From the IMG/VR virus record IMGVR_UViG_3300029893_000001, positions 186,001 to 250,000 of that record: 64,000 nucleotides of DNA, one strand, 5' to 3'. The position numbers were made by a program, and so were the translations under genes. The notes under the pieces are model-generated. The model was not told the origin of the DNA and ran no database searches. It worked only from the letters and a program-made list of their open reading frames with translations. Positions within the stretch are counted from its first letter, which is position 1; each line of letters starts with the position of its first letter. Below, in pieces: positions 29,990 through 62,686 of the stretch.

Positions 29990-32900
29990 TTAAGTGCGGC
30001 GGAATACCGGACGCCCCACCGGGTAGAACGCATCGACCGCCTGACCAGCACGAACAACCGCCGTGCCATTTGTAATGGTGGTGTAACCTGAAGATACGCC
30101 CATGTACATTGAATTCTCATCCGTGTGTACAATGTAGGCCAGAGCAGTTCCTACAGAGACGTCCGGAGCGGTAGCTCCTGTCATTACTACCCGAGGTTTC
30201 TGATTGAAGCGGGGAGCTGTCGCCCTCCCGGTGGGAGAAGGAGCAGCAGAATAGCCGTTAAGCAGAAGAGCGCCTAAAACCACGTCTCCCCCGGGGACAT
30301 ATCCGATAAGACCACCAGCTCCGTAGGAGTCAATTCCAGCAACGCTCCCAACCAGGGAGCGTCCACGAGAAAAGGACACCCCAGGATAATCCTGGCGACC
30401 GTCTTGAATCAAAACGGATTCGTAAGAAGCGAATTCTGTGGTCCAAGATGACGGAACAGCGATACGTGTTCCTTTACGCAAAGTCCTTCCAATTCCCCCC
30501 ACCAACACGTCATCGTAAGGGTACCTAACGATCGTTGTAGCCCCGGAAATAAGGAACGTATTGGGAACAACGCTGATCGTCACCTGACCCACGCGCAAGT
30601 TCGAAGTCGAAGCTACAATGACCAACAAAGTCTCAGAGCTTGGACTGGAGGAAGCCCCGACAGCCACCTCGTGCAAACTACGAGTGTTTGCTGGACTGGT
30701 GACAGACGCGTGGAATTCGTTTGAAACAGCGGAGAACGCGCCGGTGAGTCTGTCCCTAGTAACGAATCCGCAAGCAAGATCTCCAGAGGGTCCAGCCGAC
30801 TCCGTTTCGATAGTAACTCCGACGATGCTCTCACCAAGATTTACCGGAAGAGGAACGTAGAGCGTCGTTCCAGCGAGCTGAGACCGCCACATTGCCTCAT
30901 CTGGAGTCCCGCCAGAGTACTCCAGAACCCAAGGAGACGCCTCACTCCGTGGATAAGCAACAGTCGGAGGAACCGGACGAACAACAGGTGCATCCATAAG
31001 AGCCGTATGAGAAAGGAAGCTCTCAGGAGAGTACCTAGAACCGACACTTGCGCCGTTCGCTGCCTTCTTCGGGAAGGGCAAGCGTTGAGAAACTGCTAAT
31101 GGGGGCCGGTCTGCAGGACGATAGAATTTGGCCGTATCATCCTGAACAAAATAACCCCCATAATTCGGGCCGTCTGAGGATTGCAGGTATCTATCCGTGA
31201 CTCGACCCTTCGAGTACAGTAGACCCATGTCAAATCCAGAAGACGTAACAAACCCGTACACCCCTGGTGGACTGCTAGAGTGAGCATCCCGTCGAAGGGA
31301 CGTACCTAGCAACCGGTAGTCTAACCAGGGCTTGTTTGGCCCATTGGTGAACAAGATCTGATCGGAAATGCCCTCGACTGAACCATTCAGTCTAGTCTCC
31401 AAAGACTGGGTAATTCCTTGATACGGGGTGTATTCGTAGTAGATTCTCGCACGCGCCCCGGTTACGAGAGGCACTCGCACCGGGCCAACAACGATGGTGT
31501 TATGAACACCAGTGGCACCGCCCGTATGTTCGTAACGACACGAGAACATAGAGCTGTACGCTCCGATATTCATCGGAGTCCCAGAAGTATCTACAGCCTC
31601 CTGAAGAGAAACTGATTGGCCGGTGCCGATATTACGAACAGGATCACGATCAGCAGAATCGAACCAAATCTCCCACGCAGCATTTCCCGTCCCTGCTGAG
31701 TAGAAAGACAAGTCCGTGAATCCAGGGAATGCAACGTTGCTGAAGATCCCAGCGGTGAATTCATTGCCGCTACGTACACCACCCATTACAGATATGCCGC
31801 AGTCAGCCCAAGGACACAGAGGATTCGGAGATTCAAAGGTCTTGTGAACTGTTGAAGCGTCGATCTGGAACTGATTCGAACCGATCTGATAGGGCCCGCG
31901 AACTTGCTTGCTTCCTGGATCAATTTCGAACCAGCGGTCGACGATATCTCCCAAAGAAACCAGCGTAACACTAGCTGTAGTTCCACCAGGAACGGTACCC
32001 GGCTTAAATTCGATTCGAACTCGCTGGAACGCGGGGGATGCACCAGCGTCATCTGTGAATTGAATGTAACGAATCTTGTCTTGGACGGAGGTGGTATCCA
32101 AGCTAAGACCCGCTACTGCATAGTTTTGCAACGCACCTGCAGCAGAAGCAATCTGAGACGAGACAGAACCGTTTGCGAATAGAGTCGCACGGTCAATCAC
32201 GACTTCATCCCCAACAACAGGAACGTTAATGACGTTGAGAGGTACTCCGATCCACGCACGGCTAAACGGGGCAGCACCTGTCAATGAATACTCAATCCGA
32301 TGCACCCGGTCAGGAACCGCTAACAAGCCACGATTGTTGACATACGTGTTAAGCGACGATGTCCGACCAGCCTCATGATTTCGCTTAACAGCCCATACAC
32401 CAACCAAAACGCGAGCGCCTGCAGCGGCATATGCCGCCAACGCATTAAGAGTGAGTTGGACTTCCGTCTGCCTAAGAGGCTGCGGCGATACTTGGTCACC
32501 CTGAACAAGCCAGCCAAGCGGAATGCCGCCACTGAAGTACGTATGGTCCATAGGAATAGGACGACGATCTCCTGCAACGTTGCCGTCGATGGAGTACGCA
32601 ACAAATCCCTGAGGCCCATAGGGACGAACGCGTGTCTGCGGGTCAATTGAAAGCATGTAACCTTGAGGCAAATTGATGCCCAAGGTATTTGTGGCTGCAG
32701 TCCACGTGAAAATGCCAGTAGCATCGGTATGGTCTACAGTCAAATTCAAGAAAGTCCACGTAAACAATTCTGCTTCATCTGACTCCGCCCAGACCGTTTG
32801 ACGACTATTGGGAACGTTTGGAATCAGATGCGCACCTGCGGTGGCAGAGGGCCCGATTTCGTCCACTTGGAGTAGACTGGTACCCGCTACGTTGGACGCA

Positions 32901-35053
32901 ATTGGATGCGTCCTCATGTTAGTACGTAGTTCACCCGCGATGAGCTTATCAAAGCTCTCGTCCAAAATACGCTGAAGCTCTTCGGGGTCTGAGATCGAAC
33001 GAGAACGAACATCCAGGACTTCTCCCTCATAGGGAAACGTTGCAGCCTGGTTGGGGAGTCCGGGGAATGCGCTTCGATTCGCCCCATTCTGTCCAGCTAC
33101 AGTTAGTGCGTAGGCGCCTGTATTTCGACGATGAACCAAGCAAACTGGAAGTGCCCAGACCGCAGAAGCAGGGTCCTCTCCCACGAGAGGGTCAGATGAC
33201 CTAGACCACAAAGAAGGCTCCCCGCTAACCGCAGCGTAGACGCCCGTCGCAGTCATCGCTCCTTCTGCAGCGGTCTCAAGTGCCCCGAGTGGAAGGCTGA
33301 AGAACCTGAACTTGCCCACCCACTGCGCTCGTCGTGGTCCAATTCTCGCCCTAAACTGAAGCTCAGGCCCTGAATCAGCATCAGGAGACGGCGGAGTGAA
33401 CATGGTCTGGAAGACCTCCAAAACCAGAAGGTCTGTACGTCCCGATGTGGCCGGAGGTGCCGGAAGAGCAACGTTTGCTGGCGAGGTCCAACGAAGATAA
33501 CGACCAAGCACCTGAACCAATGACGAAGGAATGTCCAAAGACCCATCGTTGATTTGAATCGGGTCATTGGTCCCGGTGATGAAACCGGCTGGTCTTTCAA
33601 GCTGAGCAGCCGCAGCAGCGGCTGAAGCACCAGCGACGAGGGCCTCCTCCACCTCCACTAAACCAATACCAAGTTCGGCACGTGGGGCTACGTCAAAGAC
33701 GTAACGCTCACCATCCCGGAAAGTATCAATGAAGGGTGGCCCAGCTAGTTCGTCACTTGTTCTGCGAACTACAACGAGTGGAATAGCCCACGAAACCCCG
33801 TCGTGAGAGGAAACAGCGGCTGTTGCCTGCCACAGCTTTTGGTCCGTATTAGAAACAACGCTAAAAGCGTTGCCATCTACGTTCGTGATGGCGGCAGCAA
33901 CTGTCGACGTATCCGTCAACACACTTACGTTAACGTTCTGGATAATCCGGTACTGGTATCTCGTGACGACGAACGTAGTGGAGTCATACACCTCCATCTC
34001 AGACAAGTCGAAAGAAGGTGCTAGGGTCCCACCTTGCTCTGTCATCTGCTCCAAAGCAGTTCGAACAACGGAGAAGCTCCTCGCAACGGCTCCTTCGTCG
34101 TCGTAGGTCTCTGAAGAAGGCACTGCGATCGTTTCGCGCCAAGCCTCAAGGATTAGAAGGTCGAAGCGTTCACCTGCACCCGGGGCCGCAGGAAACGACA
34201 GGCTTGTTGCATGTGTTTTGATGAAGTGGCCGTTCATCAAGTAGTGGCAGCCGGGCAACAATGCGGTGTTTGCAATTCCGTTCAAAGGGATGAACGGAAA
34301 TTGAACCACGCCAGGCCCGCGAACCGCTGAGCCAGCAACAGAAGCACCCGAGGTTGCTTGGGGGATCTCGTTTAGAAACCCAGAACCGCTTGTAACCCGG
34401 TGCCACTGATGACGAGACTCAGCGTTCCTGGAAGAAATCTCGCCAAGGTCAACCGCACCTCCAATAGGTGCCCAAGCCGATGTAGAAGCATTCCACTGAT
34501 AAGCGAGGCGAGTATCAAATGCGATACGAACGTCCCCGTCTCGGTTGTGGGTGGTCGGAAGAGAGGCGACAGTAGATACTGGCATCCGCCAGCCAGTCTT
34601 TCCAAGCTTGTCTGCCCAGTCTCCAACTGAATAGTCGATCTCAACTCCGGGATCAGTCAATGCTGTCGCCCCAAAGGGAATTGAAAACTTGGCGAATGTT
34701 ACGAAGTAGTTACGACTTACACTAGTCGACCAGGTTGTCTCTGGGATAACCTGCAGATTAACGATAGGACTAGTAAGGCTTCTGTACTCCAAATGGAGAA
34801 CCAGGTAGCTGACCCTGTCGGGTCCAGCAGCAGCAGGAGCCGGAATAGAGCGCGTTTCTGTAGAATCAGAAACGGCCACCATACCATCATATCCTGTGAC
34901 GATAAAGGGCGCGATTGAAACCTGAAGAGAAACTGCTGATGGTGTCAGCGTTCCACCATCGAAGATAGCCCGATCAACAATTCGAGCTTGGGTGGTGTTC
35001 AGGTCAAGAGTGCTGTCCTGGTTCCGAAACTGGAGAATGGGCTTGATTGCCAC
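29990..35053 (-). CDS. Large baseplate wedge/tail-fibre scaffold protein
   Basis: 1687 aa; internally repeated 'PAxP...R.DLL.LE' and 'WA.P...V.RR' domains. Confidence 0.7.
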   Translation of the reverse strand: MAIKPILQFRNQDSTLDLNTTQARIVDRAIFDGGTLTPSAVSLQVSIAPFIVTGYDGMVAVSDSTETRSIPAPAAAGPDRVSYLVLHLEYRSLTSPIVNLQVIPETTWSTSVSRNYFVTFAKFSIPFGATALTDPGVEIDYSVGDWADKLGKTGWRMPVSTVASLPTTHNRDGDVRIAFDTRLAYQWNASTSAWAPIGGAVDLGEISSRNAESRHQWHRVTSGSGFLNEIPQATSGASVAGSAVRGPGVVQFPFIPLNGIANTALLPGCHYLMNGHFIKTHATSLSFPAAPGAGERFDLLILEAWRETIAVPSSETYDDEGAVARSFSVVRTALEQMTEQGGTLAPSFDLSEMEVYDSTTFVVTRYQYRIIQNVNVSVLTDTSTVAAAITNVDGNAFSVVSNTDQKLWQATAAVSSHDGVSWAIPLVVVRRTSDELAGPPFIDTFRDGERYVFDVAPRAELGIGLVEVEEALVAGASAAAAAAQLERPAGFITGTNDPIQINDGSLDIPSSLVQVLGRYLRWTSPANVALPAPPATSGRTDLLVLEVFQTMFTPPSPDADSGPELQFRARIGPRRAQWVGKFRFFSLPLGALETAAEGAMTATGVYAAVSGEPSLWSRSSDPLVGEDPASAVWALPVCLVHRRNTGAYALTVAGQNGANRSAFPGLPNQAATFPYEGEVLDVRSRSISDPEELQRILDESFDKLIAGELRTNMRTHPIASNVAGTSLLQVDEIGPSATAGAHLIPNVPNSRQTVWAESDEAELFTWTFLNLTVDHTDATGIFTWTAATNTLGINLPQGYMLSIDPQTRVRPYGPQGFVAYSIDGNVAGDRRPIPMDHTYFSGGIPLGWLVQGDQVSPQPLRQTEVQLTLNALAAYAAAGARVLVGVWAVKRNHEAGRTSSLNTYVNNRGLLAVPDRVHRIEYSLTGAAPFSRAWIGVPLNVINVPVVGDEVVIDRATLFANGSVSSQIASAAGALQNYAVAGLSLDTTSVQDKIRYIQFTDDAGASPAFQRVRIEFKPGTVPGGTTASVTLVSLGDIVDRWFEIDPGSKQVRGPYQIGSNQFQIDASTVHKTFESPNPLCPWADCGISVMGGVRSGNEFTAGIFSNVAFPGFTDLSFYSAGTGNAAWEIWFDSADRDPVRNIGTGQSVSLQEAVDTSGTPMNIGAYSSMFSCRYEHTGGATGVHNTIVVGPVRVPLVTGARARIYYEYTPYQGITQSLETRLNGSVEGISDQILFTNGPNKPWLDYRLLGTSLRRDAHSSSPPGVYGFVTSSGFDMGLLYSKGRVTDRYLQSSDGPNYGGYFVQDDTAKFYRPADRPPLAVSQRLPFPKKAANGASVGSRYSPESFLSHTALMDAPVVRPVPPTVAYPRSEASPWVLEYSGGTPDEAMWRSQLAGTTLYVPLPVNLGESIVGVTIETESAGPSGDLACGFVTRDRLTGAFSAVSNEFHASVTSPANTRSLHEVAVGASSSPSSETLLVIVASTSNLRVGQVTISVVPNTFLISGATTIVRYPYDDVLVGGIGRTLRKGTRIAVPSSWTTEFASYESVLIQDGRQDYPGVSFSRGRSLVGSVAGIDSYGAGGLIGYVPGGDVVLGALLLNGYSAAPSPTGRATAPRFNQKPRVVMTGATAPDVSVGTALAYIVHTDENSMYMGVSSGYTTITNGTAVVRAGQAVDAFYPVGRPVFRRT

Positions 35054-56309: not shown

Positions 56310-57650
56310 TCAGTCCCTCAGGATTTCTCCAAGGTCATCCTCATCTGAAACAACTGGCACCTTACGCCGCTTCTTTGGGACTTCCGTCATTTCCGACTCT
56401 AGAGCGACCTTTCCCTTTTTCCGCTTTGGACGAACTTTAGACGCCTCTGGCTCCGCTGGTGTTAGAACTGAGGCAATAGCCTCTAGCTCATTCTCTGCAT
56501 CCTCAGCAGCTTCCTCGTCAAAGTCATATAGAGACTCCCAATTGTTAGCACTGAAAAAGAGCTTGTACGCTAAATCAGATTCCAACTGAGTTCTGCAGGC
56601 AGACCTGAATTCGTTGGTACAGAGAACTCGCATCAAGTCGTCGGTGAAAAAGGCTTGATTATTCCACTCGAAGTCACCGTCTACCTGAAGACGGATCATT
56701 CTCTTGTTACCACTCTTCTCGACTTGACCAGTAAGCTCCAAGTAGCCCAAGCCATCACGGCCTCGCTCGTACCCCCGTCCGAAAGCCACGGTCATAGTTT
56801 CCGTGCACTCCAAGAAGGGAGGGAATTGCTTGTTCTTTTTGGTTGCAATATTGACGTACCTCATCGACCTATTACGTTCGACGAATGGCTGCTTAACGGC
56901 GCTCAAGCGGAATTTCAGATCAGGGTAGAACTTCCATGCCTGACCGCCAGGTTCGTACTCTGGATTACCAAACATCTGCCCAGGATTTAGTCGAGTTTGG
57001 TTTGTGGCGAATAACGACACATTCTTTCTACCCAGTTTCGACTTGACCAGGGGCAAATACATAGAGTGAACGGCAGCAGCCGCCGCCATTCTGACGTTCT
57101 CGTCGTCTTCTTCGATGGCCTCGGGGAGCATCGATGCAACCGAGTCAACAACGAACAAAGCCTGAGGAAGGGGACGCCCGCCCTCATTCGGTGTATAGTT
57201 CGGCAGAGCCCTAAGCAGACGAGCCATGGTTCTATAGGTTTGCTCTGCAGTATCGGGCTGATAGTAATGAAAGTAAGGATTCTTCCTACCGTCAGATAAG
57301 CGCATGCGGACTCCAAGGGCACGGAAGTACTTAGCGTCTGATGCTGTCTCGTGGTCGAAGAAAAATACCGGGATCTTCTGTCTGGTAGCATTGGCAATCA
57401 AATGACCAGCAGCAGTAGACTTACCACTTCCTTCCGGACCATAAGCATTAGTAACTTTCCCTGGTGGGAGCCCGCCCCCGGTCAAAAGATCGAGGATTAG
57501 AGAACCAAACGAAATTGCACCCTCAACATAAGAGCCACGGTCCAGCGAAACAGGTGGATTATCGGTGTCCTTACCAATCGTTTCAGCAAGCGCTGCAAGT
57601 TCATCAATATTTGTAACGTAGTTACGTTCAACGGTCTTCTTTTTTGCCAT
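56310..57650 (-). CDS. recA: RecA/UvsX-like recombinase
   Basis: LDLLTGGGLP.G, GPEGSGKST, DHE, VVDSVA, TNQ.R, PGG.A.KFY, KKNK..PPF; start set at ATG 57650 (AGGA RBS). Confidence 0.95.
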   Translation of the reverse strand: MAKKKTVERNYVTNIDELAALAETIGKDTDNPPVSLDRGSYVEGAISFGSLILDLLTGGGLPPGKVTNAYGPEGSGKSTAAGHLIANATRQKIPVFFFDHETASDAKYFRALGVRMRLSDGRKNPYFHYYQPDTAEQTYRTMARLLRALPNYTPNEGGRPLPQALFVVDSVASMLPEAIEEDDENVRMAAAAAVHSMYLPLVKSKLGRKNVSLFATNQTRLNPGQMFGNPEYEPGGQAWKFYPDLKFRLSAVKQPFVERNRSMRYVNIATKKNKQFPPFLECTETMTVAFGRGYERGRDGLGYLELTGQVEKSGNKRMIRLQVDGDFEWNNQAFFTDDLMRVLCTNEFRSACRTQLESDLAYKLFFSANNWESLYDFDEEAAEDAENELEAIASVLTPAEPEASKVRPKRKKGKVALESEMTEVPKKRRKVPVVSDEDDLGEILRD

Positions 57651-57681
57651 GTGAAGTTCCTGTGGGGGTATTAGTGTGAGT

Positions 57682-57713
57682 GAAGGAGTAAAGGAGTAAA
57701 GGATTGAAGGATG
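57682..57713. repeat. Four tandem 8-bp repeats in the recA leader
   Basis: gaaggagt aaaggagt aaaggatt gaaggatg on the + strand. Confidence 0.85.
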
Positions 57714-57736
57714 GGTCAACAGACCCTAAACTACGA

Positions 57737-59491
57737 CTAAGACTCTTCATCTTCCGAAGAGGGAACGATCCTGCCTTTTTCGTCGAAGACGACAAAGGAT
57801 CGCCAATCTTCACCAGAAGCACTTACATAGGGTCTTCCTGATTCCTTATCAATCAGGACACGAAGCCGGCTTCCAGACTCAGGGGAGCGAAAGGAGGGCC
57901 TCAGGCTCTTTTTGGCCATGAAAACTGCTGTTTCAGTAGCCCACTGCCAAAGGTCGTTGAAGAACTTCTCGAAGGTGAGATCTCCCCGCTCTACGGCAAG
58001 GATTTCTTCTTCAATCTCTGCGCAAAAATCAGGGTCTATTAAATCTGGGGCGGTTCGTCGGACAAAGGTCAGCACCGCCTCTCCCTTTGGAGTTATGCGA
58101 AGAAGGCCTCCTCCCAACGATTCTACGTACGAGTTGTGGTGAAGAAACTCAAGAGCGGGACGGTAGACCCAAGGTCGACCGATAAAGTGGGCATCTAACC
58201 AAGCAACTAACGTACCGTGAGTGTGGCGCTTAGGGGGTTTGGATGTCACTTCGAAAACTGAAGCTTCGACAACTGTGGAATCCGGCTCTAACGGACGAAT
58301 CGTGGGCTCAAACAGCCGCGAGCTAAGCTGATGCCACCCAGGCTCTACGAGCGAAAGACCTTCTGCACGGAAGACCTCTTCATCATCAAGAGCATAAGAA
58401 CAGTTATGCCGCTCAAATTGAGCAGGACGACCCTGAGAACCTAGAGTTCGAAACCAGATAGCCGAATAAATAGACTTCAGGTCTCCTGATAGGTCAAGCT
58501 GAGACGGTGCAAGGGAGATGTGGACTGGACGAATCGCTTCTAGCAACGAGGCAGAAGAAAACGTTGTTGGACTTTTCTCTGCCAGCTCAGCCGCCAACTT
58601 ATGGGTGACATGATCATGGATCCGTCGAGCAGCCTCAGGCGAGAGCCATGTAGAATCGGTGTACGGATAAGTAATTAGTCCCATCTCATACAAAGTGTCA
58701 CACACCCTAACGCAGGTAAGTGCGTCAATCCCATACCTCCAACTAGCAAACTGAATTATGGTGCTAAGAGTAAAGGGAGGTTGAACAGGGGCCAGTTCTC
58801 GTGCAGAGATAAACGCAGGCACTGCTGCTGCAGCTCTGCGCGCGATTTCCTGAGCGCGATTTTCAGACAGCGGTCCTGATTCTGCAGTCGAGCCATCAGA
58901 TAAGAGTGCTCGAACCACGAAGTACGAGTCAGATTTGAATTTTCTAATCTTCCGCTCGACACGAGCAAGCTCAGACAAGAGTGGAATGGCCGTACGATTT
59001 ACTTGTAGGCCCTCACCGAGTCGGGCTGCTAACACCGGAGACAGAGTGAAGTGGACAATCCGATCGGCTGCCTCCCTGGCAAGGTAGCTATTCAACGAAT
59101 TGGTGTTCAATTCTCCCGAGTTTTCTATTGCAGATTTCAAGCTTTCAACGTCCAAAGCCGTCAGTCGAATACGGCGGAACATCTTGTTGGCGTAAGAAGC
59201 AGTGATACTAATCTGATTCGCAATAGCTTCACCTTCGGGTGAAGAATCCGTTGCTGCGTAGACCACGTCAGCACGAGAAACCGCCTTCTTGATTCGTTCG
59301 AACGCCTGGATATTTCGAACCTTCCAAGTGAAGGCCAATGTTTTGGGGTCAATCCCTAATTGTGATTTGGGCAGCCCACAATAGTGTCGGTTACACGACA
59401 CCGCAACCCATCCGTCCAACGACGCTTTTCGGATGAGATCGCTGAAGAATCTCTTCTTCCCCTCAGACTCTACAACGATTAGAGAAGACAT
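57737..59491 (-). CDS. Type IA DNA topoisomerase-like protein with degenerate catalytic motifs
   Basis: LIVVES, ATDSSPEGEAIA, R..ADRIV, PFTLST, LYE.GLITYPYTDS, EAIRP, IGRP, ITPKG; TGATG-coupled to the thioredoxin-like gene. Confidence 0.9.
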   Translation of the reverse strand: MSSLIVVESEGKKRFFSDLIRKASLDGWVAVSCNRHYCGLPKSQLGIDPKTLAFTWKVRNIQAFERIKKAVSRADVVYAATDSSPEGEAIANQISITASYANKMFRRIRLTALDVESLKSAIENSGELNTNSLNSYLAREAADRIVHFTLSPVLAARLGEGLQVNRTAIPLLSELARVERKIRKFKSDSYFVVRALLSDGSTAESGPLSENRAQEIARRAAAAVPAFISARELAPVQPPFTLSTIIQFASWRYGIDALTCVRVCDTLYEMGLITYPYTDSTWLSPEAARRIHDHVTHKLAAELAEKSPTTFSSASLLEAIRPVHISLAPSQLDLSGDLKSIYSAIWFRTLGSQGRPAQFERHNCSYALDDEEVFRAEGLSLVEPGWHQLSSRLFEPTIRPLEPDSTVVEASVFEVTSKPPKRHTHGTLVAWLDAHFIGRPWVYRPALEFLHHNSYVESLGGGLLRITPKGEAVLTFVRRTAPDLIDPDFCAEIEEEILAVERGDLTFEKFFNDLWQWATETAVFMAKKSLRPSFRSPESGSRLRVLIDKESGRPYVSASGEDWRSFVVFDEKGRIVPSSEDEES

Positions 59492-59796
59492 CAAACAAGA
59501 ACCTTGCAAGCAGCGTCAATTACAGCTTCATCAAACAGACCTACAATCTTATGTTGTAGCTTCCCTTTAGCAAAAAGACGTAGTTGAGGTACCCGAACAC
59601 AAGCCAGCTCCTCAGTGGCTTGTGTTCGGGCGGAAACCTCGATAATCACTACCTGAAATCCTGAGGATCTAAGGCGACCCTCAACAGCAAAAAGCATTTG
59701 CCGGGATCTCATGCAAAGCTCATCATCGGGGTCAATGATGAGAACTGCTAGGTTTTCCTTTTGGCGAATTTGACTAAGAATCTGTTCGGCTTGCAT
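59491..59796 (-). CDS. Thioredoxin-fold protein lacking the CxxC motif
   Basis: C-terminal half VRVPQLRLFAKGKLQHKIVG matches Trx 'V.SIPT..F..G.....VG'; active-site position reads DDELC. Confidence 0.75.
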   Translation of the reverse strand: MQAEQILSQIRQKENLAVLIIDPDDELCMRSRQMLFAVEGRLRSSGFQVVIIEVSARTQATEELACVRVPQLRLFAKGKLQHKIVGLFDEAVIDAACKVLV

Positions 59797-59798
59797 AC

Positions 59799-59831
59799 AA
59801 AAGAGGGGCGGTTGATTACCGCCCCTCTTTT
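59799..59831. terminator. Intrinsic terminator hairpin after the SSB gene
   Basis: aaaagaggggcggt-tgatt-accgcccctctttt; perfect 14-bp inverted repeat with A4/T4 ends. Confidence 0.85.
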
Positions 59832-59839
59832 ACATATGC

Positions 59840-60928
59840 TCAGAGATCTCCGAAATCGTCATCGAAGTCATCATCGTCCTCTACCGGCGGACGCTTCTTC
59901 TTCTTCGCCTTAGGCGGAGGAGAATCTTCCTCATCATCGTCATCGTCCTCTACCGGCGGACGCTTCTTTTTAGGTGGAAGCGAGTCTTCGTCGTCCTCGT
60001 CATCTACTGGACGCTTCTTCTTCGCCTTCGGCGGCGGAGGAGAATCCTCCTCCTCCTCGTCGTCGTCCTCGAAGTCGTCGTCCTCTACCGGCGCACGCTT
60101 CTTCTTCGCCTTCGGCGGCGGAGGAGAATCCTCCTCCTCGTCGTCCTCGAAGTCGTCATCGTTCACTGGCTTTCTCTTGGAAGGCTTGCCCGCCGAAGGC
60201 TTAGGAGACTCAAAATCATCCTCGTCATCATCTACTGGACGCTTTTTGGAGCCTTTTCTCGGAAGAGACTCTGTTTCCTCGTCATCCGATTTAGTATCGA
60301 AGTAGCCATGCCTCTTGAGGTCTTCACGAATCTTGTGAATGTCGGGCTCTTGATAGAACTCGTCAAACGAGATAAGCTCAAGAGACGTCTCCTCCTCGGA
60401 CAGAGGAGAGCGATCTCCTTTCTGGACCTGCCACTCTACACCGCCACGCTTCTTACTGCGCTGCTTCTGCAGATGGATATCGCACCCAAGCTTTGGGTGC
60501 GCGATGGACTTAGGCTCGCCTTTGACCATGTTCAGCTTCTTGAGGTCAAGGAGCTGTCGCATGACAGTAGGAGGGACATCCAGTGCTCGAATTGGATCCG
60601 CATCGCCACGATTCTGTGCAGTCCGGTCAATGACATTCATCATGTAACGAACACTAGGGCGCAGGCCCACTTCACAAGCAGGGCATCCTCCCTTTTTCGA
60701 AGAGGATTCGCTATCAGGATCCCAGTTCGCGCAGTCTACGGGATAGCGCTTCTTTTCGCCCGTCTTATTGACGAACTCGATCCAATGTTGTGCGTAACTG
60801 AATACGCCGCCCACGATCCGGAAGGGATACCATTCATCCATCTTGGGTAGCTCAGCTACCGAAATGTCTTCCTTCCAGTTTTTGTCGCGGGTACGAGGGT
60901 TTGTATCATCGAAATCTTTGAGTGCCAC
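59840..60928 (-). CDS. Single-stranded DNA-binding protein (gp32-like) with repetitive acidic/basic tail
   Basis: FRIVG...QHW...C...CPAC...YMMNVIDR...GCDI core with Zn ligands; ~150-aa D/E/K/P tail ending DFDDDFGDL. Confidence 0.8.
   Translation of the reverse strand: MALKDFDDTNPRTRDKNWKEDISVAELPKMDEWYPFRIVGGVFSYAQHWIEFVNKTGEKKRYPVDCANWDPDSESSSKKGGCPACEVGLRPSVRYMMNVIDRTAQNRGDADPIRALDVPPTVMRQLLDLKKLNMVKGEPKSIAHPKLGCDIHLQKQRSKKRGGVEWQVQKGDRSPLSEEETSLELISFDEFYQEPDIHKIREDLKRHGYFDTKSDDEETESLPRKGSKKRPVDDDEDDFESPKPSAGKPSKRKPVNDDDFEDDEEEDSPPPPKAKKKRAPVEDDDFEDDDEEEEDSPPPPKAKKKRPVDDEDDEDSLPPKKKRPPVEDDDDDEEDSPPPKAKKKKRPPVEDDDDFDDDFGDL
59843..60290 (-). repeat. Imperfect coding repeats (about 5-6 units) in the SSB tail
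   Basis: Units such as EEEDSPPPPKAKKKRxPVEDDD; nucleotide motifs tcctctaccggcg and cgcttcttcttcgcctt recur. Confidence 0.9.
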
Positions 60929-60992
60929 GGGTTTTACCTTTTACGTGTCAACGGGTTAAATGGGGACTGTGTACGTATGTACAAAACGAGAT

Positions 60993-62225
60993 TTAGAGGG
61001 CAGATACCTGCCTAAGTCTTTCTGCCTTGACCTTTTGGGGGTCGAGCTTCTGAGAAACATACTCTGTTAGGCCATAGGCCAAACAGACTAGGTTCCGAAG
61101 GTTGTCAGGGAGCGAGTCAAGAAGGACTTTTACAGAATCAGAAGGATCATAATCAAGTGGGTCTGACTGTTCTTCTTGGGATTCAATGATAGAGGAAATA
61201 GGAGTTGAGGATCCATCTGGTTTGAGGGGGTAGTCGAGAGATCGAACCTGTGACGTCCGAACTGTACTATAGATAGCGTCTACATGGCTTCTCGAATACC
61301 CAGAAACACGAGAAAGTTCTTCAGTAGTCAGAGGACCAGACTGAGATTCTTGCTTTAGTCGAATAGCCTCTAACTTAGCGTAGTGTTGCCAGGTGTTCGA
61401 TGATACCCGGATCAAATTAGAGTCTTCTTTCAGGTAGTACAGCATACTTTGCCGTATCCACCACCGAGCGTGACCCACAAATCTCGCGTTTGAGACTTCG
61501 TCGTAAGACGAAATAGCCCGAAGCAAGCCGAAGCTTCCATTCTGGAAACAGTCGAGCGCGTGGTCCTCCGAAACAGCTTGGGCTTTCGCCTGCTTCAGGA
61601 TTACCCTTGAGTATGCGTTGAATACTCGTTCATAGATCTCTTGAAGTGCAGCTAAGCGTTCAGCAATATAGCGAACGATCCCAAAAGCTGTTCTCGGATC
61701 CAGGCGGCAATCCTGTTCTAAATAATGACACGCGGCATCCGCTGCGGACGCTTCCTCTAAGTCGTCGTTCAAATGAGCCAACAAACTTCGGTGGGAGGCT
61801 TCCTGGTACTGAGAAGCCTTAGAGCACCAGTCCTTCAAGAATTGTTCAAACACCATCCGAGTAAGAGGGAGGGCCAGAACAATATCTAGCTGGCGGTCTT
61901 TATCTCCGTCTAATGTGGCAGCCTGCAAGTCCATGCAAGCGCACAAAAAATCAGCCTCTCGCTGCTCCGGGTCCACCGGGACGTCCTTCACGGACCCATC
62001 GATAAAGGCGATCGATCTTCGATAGATTGCTTTATTGCGGTCTAGGTTGGAAGCTACTTCCGCCCCCAGAGCTATTACACCTAGTTGGATGTAATCATTT
62101 TCTCTCAACAGCAAACGAACGCAATCATAGACAAGCAAAGACGCTCGACTGAACAGGGGAAACAATTCTTCTTGGGTAAGCGTATCCCCTGAGTTGACAG
62201 TCTCGATCAACGTCCGCGCAGTCAT
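60993..62225 (-). CDS. Sigma70-family RNA polymerase sigma factor, region 4 degenerate/truncated
   Basis: Region 2 DCFQNGSFGLLRAISSYD...RFVGHARWWIRQSM; region 3 LIRV...T.EELS...SLDYP; start at the TGATG overlap 62225. Confidence 0.88.
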   Translation of the reverse strand: MTARTLIETVNSGDTLTQEELFPLFSRASLLVYDCVRLLLRENDYIQLGVIALGAEVASNLDRNKAIYRRSIAFIDGSVKDVPVDPEQREADFLCACMDLQAATLDGDKDRQLDIVLALPLTRMVFEQFLKDWCSKASQYQEASHRSLLAHLNDDLEEASAADAACHYLEQDCRLDPRTAFGIVRYIAERLAALQEIYERVFNAYSRVILKQAKAQAVSEDHALDCFQNGSFGLLRAISSYDEVSNARFVGHARWWIRQSMLYYLKEDSNLIRVSSNTWQHYAKLEAIRLKQESQSGPLTTEELSRVSGYSRSHVDAIYSTVRTSQVRSLDYPLKPDGSSTPISSIIESQEEQSDPLDYDPSDSVKVLLDSLPDNLRNLVCLAYGLTEYVSQKLDPQKVKAERLRQVSAL

Positions 62226-62686
62226 CAAGTTAGCTGCCTTAGGCGGTCGTTTATAGACACTCTGGGAGATTGCTGACGCAGTCGCTGCATCTCCGTTGAG
62301 TTCGTTGCAAGCAGAGTCTCGGCTAATTTGAGCAAGTGCGGGCATAGTCCTGGTTTCTGGAACCCCCTGAGTTTTTCAGGGATGTCTTCCGGTCCGACTC
62401 TCATGTCTGTGGCCCCCATAGTGTAGAGAGCAGGGGCACATCGTACCTTGAAGTACGCACAGGAACACGAAACTTTAGCGGACGCAGCCGGATCAATCTC
62501 CTCAGAATAAATCCTGATCACGGACTTACGCGGATCCTTTCCCCCGGAAATTACCGCAAGGAATTGGATAAAGTCCCCCAAGTTATCAGACTCTTTACGG
62601 GTTTTGAGGGCCTCAACCTTGTACTCCGTCTTAAAACGACGGCGGTCCGGCTGAGTAACGACCAAAAGCTGACTCAATGTAAGCAT
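62225..62686 (-). CDS. SWIM-type zinc-finger protein
   Basis: KVSCSCAYF...PGLCPHL; paralog of 14609..15385. Confidence 0.75.
   Translation of the reverse strand: MLTLSQLLVVTQPDRRRFKTEYKVEALKTRKESDNLGDFIQFLAVISGGKDPRKSVIRIYSEEIDPAASAKVSCSCAYFKVRCAPALYTMGATDMRVGPEDIPEKLRGFQKPGLCPHLLKLAETLLATNSTEMQRLRQQSPRVSINDRLRQLT

What the first reader, a model, noticed from the sequence alone, without database searches (positions are those of the whole stretch)
59843..60290. SSB tail built from alternating acidic blocks and PPPKAKKKR basic blocks
Seen: about 40% of the protein is a repeat-expanded disordered tail with strongly segregated charges, unlike the short acidic tail of T4 gp32. Known: blocky charge patterning promotes phase separation, and E. 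coli SSB forms condensates through its tail. Inference: it may scaffold a condensate-like replication compartment; repeat number may vary between strains.
Basis: partly seen in the sequence, partly recalled or inferred. Interest (0 to 1): 0.6.

Follow-up and report, generated by a model that had tools for sequence, protein, structure and literature searches.

The report
Jumbo-phage SSB with charge-block tail
A 392-kb phage encodes a T4-gp32-type single-stranded-DNA-binding protein whose last 150 residues are a disordered tail of alternating acidic and lysine-proline blocks. Its whole phage clade, including cultured phages, and two other DNA proteins of the same genome share this design, which probably works as a multivalent electrostatic docking and clustering arm; condensate formation is untested.

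Summary
The ORF at 59840-60928 (-) encodes a 362-aa protein. Residues 213-362 (41%) are 40% D/E, 21% K/R and 17% P, arranged as seven acidic and six basic blocks. Charge segregation is about 13 sd above shuffles; the T4 gp32 tail scores 0.4.

The core (residues about 20-210, pLDDT above 90) has the gp32 fold (RB69 and T4 gp32 are the top PDB matches) with an H/C/C-x2-C zinc pattern. The tail is predicted to be disordered.

The gene sits in a sigma factor - SSB - topoisomerase IA - UvsX block of a complete 392-kb group-2 jumbo phage from subsurface metagenomes.

All 19 close relatives keep the tail, with 2-7 basic blocks. The tail diverges fast by indels while net charge and blockiness are kept. 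Five of five cultured-phage relatives found through the core alone (phiRSL1, Motura, a Rhizobium phage, a Vibrio phage, a Xanthomonas phage) also have acid/lysine block tails.

The basic-block/acidic-block junction motif occurs in only three of 566 ORFs of the genome: the SSB, the UvsX tail and an AT-hook-like protein.

The likeliest role is an enlarged gp32 A-domain or SSB linker-plus-tip, giving multivalent electrostatic docking and cross-linking. Condensate scaffolding is plausible but untested. Strain-level repeat variation could not be tested.

The parts
59840..60928 (-). SSB gene, 362 aa, GTG start, stop codon at 59840-59842
   Evidence: ORF list and translation. phrog_15004 'single strand DNA binding protein', E 1e-19. 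Nineteen relatives begin at the same N-terminus.
60293..60928 (-). Folded core, residues 1-212: gp32-type OB fold preceded by a conserved N-terminal K-D-F-D-D segment
   Evidence: AF2 pLDDT above 90 for residues about 20-210. Foldseek top hits are RB69 gp32 core 2a1k and T4 gp32 core 1gpc, probability 1.00, target TM 0.61.
60674..60787 (-). Putative zinc site: H48, C66, C82, C85 (H-x17-C-x15-C-x2-C)
   Evidence: All four residues are invariant in 19 relatives. hhalign pairs the C-P-A-C of the window protein with the C-P-V-C (C87/C90) of T4 gp32. Metal binding itself was not tested.
59843..60292 (-). Disordered tail, residues 213-362: seven acidic blocks alternating with six Lys/Pro-rich basic blocks
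59843..59881 (-). C-terminal acidic-aromatic tip, residues 350-362 (ends D-F-D-D-D-F-G-D-L)
   Evidence: Conserved in close relatives. 61 of 91 family members end acidic plus hydrophobic, and 10 of 91 end IPF or IPY.
59793..59839 (-). Intrinsic-terminator-like hairpin directly after the SSB stop codon, followed by a U-run
   Evidence: RNA fold -32.3 kcal/mol, z -8.3 against shuffles.
56313..56522 (-). C-terminal tail of the UvsX/RecA-like recombinase (gene 56310-57719): an acidic stretch, two K/R blocks, one copy of the SSB-type junction motif, and an acidic-hydrophobic end
   Evidence: K/R blocks are kept in the UvsX tails of four relatives.
60993..62345 (-). Sigma-70-family factor upstream of the SSB gene (conserved synteny)
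   Evidence: Pfam Sigma70_r2 and phrog_351. The same order is found in phiRSL1, Motura and Vibrio phage GR7B and in close relatives.
57737..59509 (-). Type IA topoisomerase downstream of the SSB gene (conserved in the close clade)
   Evidence: Pfam Topoisom_bac, E 2e-55. Same position in relatives.

Best explanation
What it is. The gene encodes the replication/recombination ssDNA-binding protein of a 392-kb group-2 (phiRSL1/Motura-like, sigma-factor-using, nucleus-less) jumbo phage. It has a gp32-fold, probably zinc-containing OB core followed by a 150-residue intrinsically disordered polyampholyte tail. The tail is built from about six degenerate units: an acidic run (often with a Phe), then S-P-P-P, then K-A-K-K-K-R, then P-(P)-V. 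It ends in an acidic-aromatic tip.

How it most likely works (inferred). The tail is an enlarged, repeated version of what the gp32 A domain and the bacterial SSB linker-plus-tip do.
1. Off DNA, the acidic blocks and tip fold back on the basic DNA-binding cleft and on the tail's own lysine blocks. This restrains binding.
2. On ssDNA they are released. They then offer several acidic-aromatic docking sites to partners that carry basic patches or K/R blocks. UvsX, whose own tail has K/R blocks, is the prime candidate.
3. The lysine-proline blocks contact the DNA backbone or the acidic blocks of neighbouring SSB molecules. This adds cooperativity and cross-links coated ssDNA with other block-tailed DNA proteins into dense assemblies.

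Shown versus inferred. Shown here: identity, fold, disorder, charge pattern, conservation and the shared motif. Inferred: steps 1-3.
For: - Identity: phrog_15004, E 1e-19; gp32 and RB69 gp32 are the top structural matches; sigma-SSB-RecA synteny is shared with annotated SSBs of phiRSL1 and Motura.
- Disorder and pattern.
- Selection on grammar, not sequence: the core is 56-94% identical with 1-2% gap columns. The tail is 30-61% identical with 18-45% gaps, yet net charge stays at -15 to -37 and blockiness z at 9-16 in all 19 relatives.
- Family-wide: five of five cultured-phage hits found through the core only have acid/lysine block tails.
- Docking-motif reading: acidic runs carry Phe in 4 of 7 blocks here and in 1-4 blocks in 18 of 19 close relatives. 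The tip resembles the E. coli SSB C-terminal peptide (its sequence is from my own knowledge), and Motura plus nine metagenomic relatives end in IPF or IPY.
- Precedent in T4: gp32 binds Dda through an acidic segment with Leu and Phe, and its far acidic end is thought to occupy the ssDNA site (PMC11551737).
- Shared module: the basic-PV-acidic / acidic-PP-basic junction occurs in only 3 of 566 ORFs, namely the SSB, UvsX and an AT-hook-like protein. Shuffles give 0.22 proteins.
- Clade conservation of the partners: UvsX tails of four relatives keep K/R blocks, and the AT-hook-like protein and its block tail are conserved in relatives.
Against: - No binding, cooperativity or localisation was measured.
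- The single complex prediction (UvsX 1-400 with tail 318-362) gave no verdict.
- The distant metagenomic relatives with block tails were collected by a word index that the tail's own low-complexity words bias. The unbiased support is limited to 19 close relatives and 5 cultured phages.
- Some family members end in basic rather than acidic tips (13 of 91), so a tip-docking role is not universal.
- Phe inside acidic blocks is recurrent but not positionally conserved.
Confidence: 0.5

Rival explanations
1. Condensate scaffold. The block tail drives phase separation and so builds a membraneless replication/recombination factory. Other block-tailed proteins (UvsX, the AT-hook-like protein) partition into it through complementary charge blocks.
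For: - Strong charge blockiness.
- The same grammar occurs on three DNA proteins of one genome and is conserved in the clade.
- Nucleolar D/E tracts and K-blocks drive complex coacervation with nucleic acids (PMC11938373).
- E. coli SSB condenses through its disordered region (PMC7584906).
- A Rhizobium-phage homologue was auto-annotated 'Nop14-like' because of this composition.
Against: - The tail is net -29 with positive SCD, so it should repel itself and ssDNA unless cationic partners or counter-ions are present.
- Saturating ssDNA dissolves EcSSB droplets (PMC7584906).
- gp32-type proteins are monomers and lack the tetramer valence of bacterial SSB.
- No experimental or localisation data exist.
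- This overlaps with, and does not exclude, the best explanation.
Confidence: 0.25
2. Passive tail. It is a solubilising or entropic bristle, or a spacer that only carries the terminal docking tip. The internal blocks have no specific partners, and block number drifts neutrally.
For: Fast sequence and indel turnover, and variable block number of 2-7. Internal motifs are not positionally conserved.
Against: - Blockiness z of 9-18 and a strictly alternating order are kept across relatives that share only 25-30% core identity. A pure spacer would not need segregated charges.
- The same junction motif recurs on two other DNA proteins.
Confidence: 0.12
3. Host-directed decoy. The acidic blocks mimic DNA, or the tip mimics the host SSB tip. 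The tail would then sequester host DNA-binding, repair or defence proteins rather than organise phage proteins.
For: Ten family members end in IPF or IPY like bacterial SSB. Phage SSBs are known triggers or targets of defence systems (abstract of bioRxiv 10.64898/2026.02.22.705581, listed).
Against: The window protein's own tip is not IPF. The host is unknown. Lysine blocks are not explained by a DNA-mimic role.
Confidence: 0.08
4. Address tag for a phage nucleus. The NLS-like P-K-K-K-R blocks would direct import into a chimallin-type shell.
For: The basic blocks look like classical nuclear localisation signals and sit on three DNA proteins.
Against: - No match to the phiKZ nuclear shell protein in the complete genome at E up to 1.
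- The genome has a sigma factor and the group-2 gene set, which uses host RNA polymerase and is distinct from phiKZ-like phages (PMC7824862).
Confidence: 0.03

Closest known systems
T4 / RB69 gp32 (PDB 1gpc, 2a1k, 8gme)
   Same: - Same core fold.
- H/C3 zinc pattern, with C-P-x-C aligned.
- Acidic C-terminal region with embedded hydrophobic residues that recruits partners (PMC11551737).
- Genomic association with UvsX.
   Different: - No significant sequence similarity: no Pfam gp32 hit, no PDB sequence hit, hhalign probability 1.7%.
- The N-terminus is K-D-F-D-D instead of the basic K-R-K-S-T cooperativity motif.
- The tail is 150 aa against 47 aa, and polyampholytic and blocky (z 13.5 against 0.4).
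SSBs of phiRSL1 (ORF222), Achromobacter phage Motura (gp037), Rhizobium phage RHph_N28_1 ('Nop14-like'), Vibrio phage GR7B, Xanthomonas phage Ep026: phrog_15004
   Same: - Same PHROG family.
- Same sigma-SSB-RecA neighbourhood.
- Same alternating acid/lysine tail design.
   Different: - Only 22-25% identity in the core.
- Their cores carry an insertion of about 30 aa, and phiRSL1 and Motura lack the cysteines.
- Their tails are longer (157-242 aa; the shorter GR7B tail of 93 aa is the exception), are Lys/Ser/Gly-rich rather than Pro-rich, and some end in IPF or in a basic run.
E. coli SSB (OB tetramer + disordered linker + acidic tip)
   Same: - Architecture of DNA-binding core, disordered region and acidic-hydrophobic tip.
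- The tip binds partners and the protein's own OB fold.
- The disordered region promotes cooperativity and condensation (PMC7584906, PMC10018359).
- The window tip shares the D-F-D-D-D start of the E. coli tip (E. coli sequence from my own knowledge).
   Different: - Different fold family; no PF00436 hit. gp32-type proteins are monomeric.
- The E. coli linker is Gly/Gln/Pro-rich and nearly uncharged, not a charge-block polyampholyte.
Nucleolar IDR grammar: D/E tracts and K-blocks (UBF, nucleolin, NUCKS; PMC11938373)
   Same: Segregated acidic tracts and lysine blocks tethered to nucleic-acid-binding domains. In nucleoli these drive asymmetric complex coacervation.
   Different: - Convergent at most.
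- Here D exceeds E, the blocks are short (4-14 residues) and strictly alternate within one tail.
- Prokaryotic virus context.
- No condensation data.
T7 gp2.5
   Same: An acidic C-terminal tail with a terminal aromatic residue regulates DNA binding and recruits replisome partners (PMC10359462, title and abstract, listed; the rest from my own knowledge).
   Different: Short, purely acidic tail. Different OB-fold family. Dimer.

Membership tests
T4 gp32-type SSB | OB-fold core superposable on gp32 | tested here: met
   Foldseek: 2a1k and 1gpc are the top hits, E 4e-6 to 1e-5, probability 1.00, target TM 0.61, on a model with core pLDDT above 90.
T4 gp32-type SSB | Zinc-binding His + three Cys subdomain | tested here: inconclusive
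   The H48/C66/C82/C85 pattern is invariant in 19 relatives. C82-x2-C85 aligns to T4 C87-x2-C90. Geometry and metal binding were not tested, and the cysteines are absent in the phiRSL1/Motura branch.
T4 gp32-type SSB | Match to the Pfam gp32 model or significant sequence similarity to gp32 | tested here: not met
   No Pfam family at E 0.01. No PDB sequence hit at E 1. hhalign probability 1.7%.
T4 gp32-type SSB | Basic N-terminal B domain (K-R-K-S-T motif) for cooperativity | tested here: not met
   The N-terminus reads M-A-L-K-D-F-D-D and is acidic-aromatic. T4 begins M-F-K-R-K-S-T.
T4 gp32-type SSB | Acidic C-terminal A domain | tested here: met
   The tail is 40% D/E with an acidic-hydrophobic end. 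It is three times longer than in T4 and is interleaved with basic blocks.
phrog_15004 (phiRSL1-type jumbo-phage SSB) | Profile match | tested here: met
   E 1e-19, 72 bits. The phiRSL1, Motura and RHph SSBs match the same profile.
phrog_15004 (phiRSL1-type jumbo-phage SSB) | Sigma factor - SSB - RecA/UvsX gene neighbourhood | tested here: met
   In the window's clade a small ORF and a topoisomerase IA gene are inserted between the SSB and UvsX genes.
Bacterial SSB (PF00436) | SSB OB-domain profile and C-terminal D-D-D-I-P-F tip | tested here: not met
   No Pfam hit. The tip is D-F-D-D-D-F-G-D-L, which is similar but not IPF.
Condensate-forming charge-block IDRs (nucleolar grammar of PMC11938373) | Non-random segregation of acidic and of basic residues (patterning z of 3 or more) | tested here: met
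   Blockiness z 13.5 by my own delta statistic, not NARDINI. The paper's extra criterion for K-block regions, that E is at least as frequent as D, is not met (D 39, E 21).
Condensate-forming charge-block IDRs (nucleolar grammar of PMC11938373) | Phase separation or partitioning demonstrated | not testable with these tools
   Needs purified protein or imaging.
Chimallivirus nuclear cargo | Genome encodes a chimallin shell and multisubunit phage RNA polymerases | tested here: not met
   No match to phiKZ gp054 at E up to 1 in the 392-kb genome; this is a weak negative because chimallins diverge. A sigma factor is present. The gene set is that of group 2 in PMC7824862.

The most novel reading that the evidence does not exclude
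Nucleus-less group-2 jumbo phages organise replication and recombination by electrostatic co-condensation. A clade-wide grammar of short alternating poly-D/E and lysine(-proline) blocks would act both as scaffold and as partitioning tag for a membraneless phage DNA factory. The grammar sits on the gp32-type SSB, on the UvsX tail and on a small AT-hook/H1-like DNA protein. This would be a prokaryotic-virus convergence on the nucleolar D/E-tract plus K-block design.
Probability: 0.2. Interest if true: 0.8.

Novelty: new variant of a known kind. Interest (0 to 1): 0.5.

Why it matters
SSB tails are the hubs that organise replication, recombination and repair. The two textbook designs are a short acidic tail (gp32, gp2.5) and an uncharged linker plus acidic tip (bacterial SSB).

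This protein shows a third design, a long micro-blocky polyampholyte. The design is conserved across a large clade of jumbo phages, including cultured and genetically accessible ones (phiRSL1, Motura). I found no paper describing it in the open literature searched.

The same module sits on the recombinase and on an AT-hook-like DNA protein of the same genome. That gives a concrete, testable hypothesis for how phages with 200-400-kb genomes and no protein nucleus concentrate their DNA machinery. It also offers a natural system for studying charge-pattern 'grammar' outside eukaryotes.

Tried and rejected
- Pfam scan of the SSB: no family.
- Sequence search of the PDB: nothing at E 1.
- hhalign of the core alignment against T4 gp32: probability 1.7%. 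It is used only to see which cysteines pair.
- Tandem Repeats Finder: only trivial 3- and 12-nt arrays, so this is not a recent tandem expansion.
- Reads: all four runs are kept as Logan contigs that end inside the repeats (60010-60110). The one 'inserted TCCTCC' row comes from short contigs of 99-114 nt that fit the paralogous repeat copy. I read it as a repeat artefact, not a polymorphism. Strain-level repeat number therefore could not be tested.
- Complex prediction, UvsX 1-400 with tail 318-362: no verdict, score 0.00. This is not evidence either way.
With the single core it returned 5 loci, none above 79% identity.
- AT-hook-like protein P0125: no Pfam or PHROG family. The IMG/VR pattern scan was empty. 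The Atlas look-alikes were uninformative. The word search found only an unrelated multi-AT-hook protein. Orthologues were then found by searching relatives' genomes. The AF2 model of its N-terminal domain has modest confidence (pLDDT 72-85 over about 50 residues) and was not sent to a fold search.
- Chimallin search: negative.
- The claim that the tail design is family-wide therefore rests on 19 close relatives and 5 cultured relatives found through the core, plus about 70 distant metagenomic relatives whose retrieval was biased by tail words.
Full report
**1.

The minus-strand ORF at 59840-60928 (GTG start) encodes 362 residues.

- Composition: 39 D, 21 E, 24 K, 7 R and 25 P. Net charge is -29, against -1 for the first 212 residues.
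- Layout: the charged residues form seven acidic runs that alternate strictly with six basic runs.
- Significance: my implementation of the Das-Pappu kappa gives 0.63. Two thousand shuffles give 0.15 +/- 0.035, and none reaches the observed value.
- Control: on the same window statistic the tail scores z = 13.5, and the T4 gp32 A domain scores 0.4.
- Scale: long-range patterning (SCD) is no different from shuffles. The segregation is a micro-block pattern of 5-12 residues on a strongly net-negative chain.
- DNA level: the units are 51-83% identical, and Tandem Repeats Finder sees only trivial arrays. The repeats are old and degenerate, not a recent slippage product.

**2. What the protein is**

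- The only family hit is phrog_15004, 'single strand DNA binding protein' (E 1e-19). Pfam and a sequence search of the PDB give nothing.
- An AlphaFold2 model built on 59 homologues has pLDDT above 90 for residues about 20-210. From residue 211 on it has no secondary structure and pLDDT about 45-59.
- Foldseek places the core next to the RB69 and T4 gp32 cores: 2a1k and 1gpc, probability 1.00, target TM 0.61. The next hits are far weaker.
- H48, C66, C82 and C85 are invariant in 19 relatives. A weak profile alignment pairs C82-x2-C85 with C87-x2-C90 of T4 gp32. This fits the gp32 zinc subdomain, though metal binding was not tested.
- Unlike T4, the N-terminus is not the basic K-R-K-S-T motif. 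It is a conserved K-D-F-D-D segment.

**3. Context**

- The window is part of a 392,328-bp IMG/VR virus record rated 100% complete. It is 53% G+C, and within the window all the long ORFs, including every gene named in this report, are on the minus strand.
- Around the SSB gene lie a sigma-70-family factor, a 101-aa ORF, a type IA topoisomerase, a UvsX/RecA-like recombinase and an SbcD-like nuclease.
- The order sigma factor - SSB - RecA is the same in phiRSL1, Motura, Rhizobium phage RHph_N28_1 and Vibrio phage GR7B. The full block is kept in close metagenomic relatives.
- This is the gene set of 'group 2' jumbo phages, which use sigma factors rather than their own RNA polymerase (PMC7824862). 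The phiKZ nuclear shell protein finds nothing in the genome.
- A very stable hairpin followed by a U-run lies directly behind the SSB stop codon (-32 kcal/mol, z -8.3).
- The DNA is held by subsurface metagenomes and, in an independent study, by a rock metagenome.

**4. The tail is a conserved design, not an oddity of one genome**

- A search restricted to the core (residues 1-212) recovers 19 relatives with 62-94% core identity, on contigs up to 424 kb, some of them marine. Every complete one has the tail.
- Across them the core has 1-2% gap columns, while the tail has 18-45% gaps and only 30-61% identity.
- Even so, tail length stays at 97-157 aa, net charge at -15 to -37, blockiness z at 9-16, and the acidic-aromatic end is kept.
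- The number of basic blocks ranges from 2 to 7. This is the signature of selection on composition and patterning.
- tblastn against cultured phages hits only through the core (22-25% identity). All five distinct phages hit carry alternating acidic and lysine blocks behind the core: phiRSL1 ORF222, Motura gp037, RHph_N28_1 (auto-annotated 'Nop14-like'), Vibrio GR7B and Xanthomonas Ep026. Blockiness z is 15-18 for three of them and 3.4 for GR7B; the Xanthomonas tail, cut by the record end, was not scored.
- About 70 more distant metagenomic relatives show the same design with up to 14 blocks. Their retrieval was helped by the tail's own words, so I count them as weaker support.

**5. Details that bear on mechanism**

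- Four of the seven acidic blocks here contain a Phe flanked by D/E. Eighteen of the 19 close relatives (all but P0022) have one to four such acidic-aromatic motifs, and 18 of 19 end in an acidic stretch carrying an aromatic or aliphatic residue (P0010 ends purely acidic).
- The tip begins with the same five residues as the E. coli SSB C-terminal peptide (from my own knowledge of that sequence). Motura and nine metagenomic relatives end in IPF or IPY.
- In T4, gp32 binds the Dda helicase through an acidic segment whose Leu and Phe insert into a pocket. Its far acidic end is thought to occupy the ssDNA site (PMC11551737).
- I scanned all 566 non-overlapping ORFs of the genome for the junction motif (three K/R, then P/V-P/V, then three D/E, or the reverse through P-P). 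It is present in three proteins, against 0.22 expected from shuffles:
  - the SSB, with ten matches;
  - the neighbouring UvsX, in a 70-residue C-terminal tail with two K/R blocks;
  - a 255-aa protein outside the window (G000 145024-145791), with a small N-terminal domain, an AT-hook-like G-R-P motif and five acid/Pro-Lys repeats ending D-W-D.
- UvsX tails of four relatives also carry acidic stretches followed by K/R blocks.
- The 255-aa protein has orthologues with the same architecture in relatives, with the D-W-D tip invariant.

**6. Interpretation**

I am confident about identity: this is the phage's gp32-type SSB.

For the tail, the best-supported reading is an enlarged and repeated version of the gp32 A domain or the bacterial SSB linker-plus-tip.

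- The acidic-aromatic blocks would mask the basic cleft off DNA. On ssDNA they would become multivalent docking sites for partners with basic patches, UvsX first among them.
- The lysine-proline blocks would contact DNA or neighbouring acidic blocks, adding cooperativity and cross-links.

- For it: the resemblance to the nucleolar D/E-tract and K-block grammar that drives complex coacervation (PMC11938373), the condensation of E. coli SSB (PMC7584906), and the sharing of the module by three DNA proteins.
- Against it: the tail alone is strongly net-negative, gp32-type proteins lack tetramer valence, and ssDNA dissolves E. coli SSB droplets.

Nothing I could compute decides between the two. The one complex prediction gave no verdict.

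A passive spacer is disfavoured by the conserved alternation. A phage-nucleus import tag is disfavoured by the absence of a shell protein and by the group-2 gene set.

**7. What could not be tested**

Repeat-number variation within this phage population could not be tested. The public runs are contigs that break at 60010-60110, and the only indel row is explained by the paralogous repeat copy. No relative closer than 94% core identity was found.

**8. Novelty and score**

- The gene is a new member of a known SSB family.
- The tail design is a distinct variant of SSB tails. It is present but unremarked in annotated cultured phages, and I found no description of it in the literature available to me.
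- I rate it a new variant of a known kind, with interest 0.5. It is not a surprise at the level of a new system. It is a clade-wide, testable design with cultured models, and it links phage replication to charge-pattern biology.

Noticed in passing
L005:5025-5792 (-) = G000:C1:145024-145791, outside the window: A 255-aa protein with a small helix-hairpin-helix N-terminal domain, an AT-hook-like K-R-G-P-G-R-P-R-K motif and five alternating poly-D/E and Pro-Lys blocks ending D-W-D-D-E-D-D. No Pfam or PHROG family. Orthologues with the same architecture occur in related jumbo phages (L016, L017, L021), and the D-W-D tip is invariant. It may be an H1/HU-tail-like DNA-coating protein.
   Followed up: partly
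window 56313-56522 (-), C-terminal tail of UvsX (gene 56310-57719): The recombinase carries a tail of about 70 residues: an acidic stretch, two NLS-like K/R blocks, one copy of the SSB-type K-K-R-R-K-V-P-V-V-S-D-E-D junction, and an acidic-hydrophobic end. K/R blocks are kept in the UvsX tails of four relatives but not in the phiRSL1, Motura or RHph RecA proteins.
   Followed up: partly
window 59793-59839 (-): A very stable terminator-like hairpin (-32.3 kcal/mol) lies directly after the SSB stop codon, and its 3' arm overlaps the ATG of the next ORF (59796). The consensus terminator scan missed it.
   Followed up: partly
P0122 (Motura gp037, L001:2890-4404) and metagenomic relatives P0025, P0027, P0033, P0040, P0054, P0069, P0082: These gp32-fold SSBs end in D-D-D-I-P-F, the signature tip of bacterial SSB. 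This suggests that some phages of this family dock host SSB-interacting proteins.
   Followed up: no
window 60866-60928 (-), residues 1-21 of the SSB: The N-terminus is a conserved K-D-F-D-D-(T/V)-N-P-R segment. A D-hydrophobic-D-D motif lies within the first 25 residues in 56 of 91 family members. That is the opposite charge of the basic cooperativity motif of T4 gp32, and it resembles the tail's own acidic-Phe motifs.
   Followed up: partly
L007:2375-3370 (+), Xanthomonas phage Ep026: Its SSB homologue runs into an uninterrupted poly-aspartate stretch of more than 40 residues, which is cut by the end of the circular record.
   Followed up: no
window 29990-35053 (-): A 1687-aa ORF with no PHROG family at E 0.001, lying among virion and lysis-type genes.
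   Followed up: no
window 59491-59796 (-): A 101-aa ORF between the SSB and topoisomerase IA genes. It has no Pfam or PHROG family, but an ORF of 75-100 aa is kept at this position in relatives.
   Followed up: no
window 59400-61400: The same sequence, with no differences on the flanks, is held by a rock metagenome from a study independent of the subsurface samples that are the likely source. Sludge metagenomes hold only small shares of the stretch.
   Followed up: partly
L019:1189-2085 (+) and L022:1213-1653 (-), related jumbo-phage records G005 and G003: Further small proteins (298 and 146 aa) have alternating acidic and Lys-rich blocks. The grammar therefore recurs on several proteins in this phage group.
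   Followed up: no
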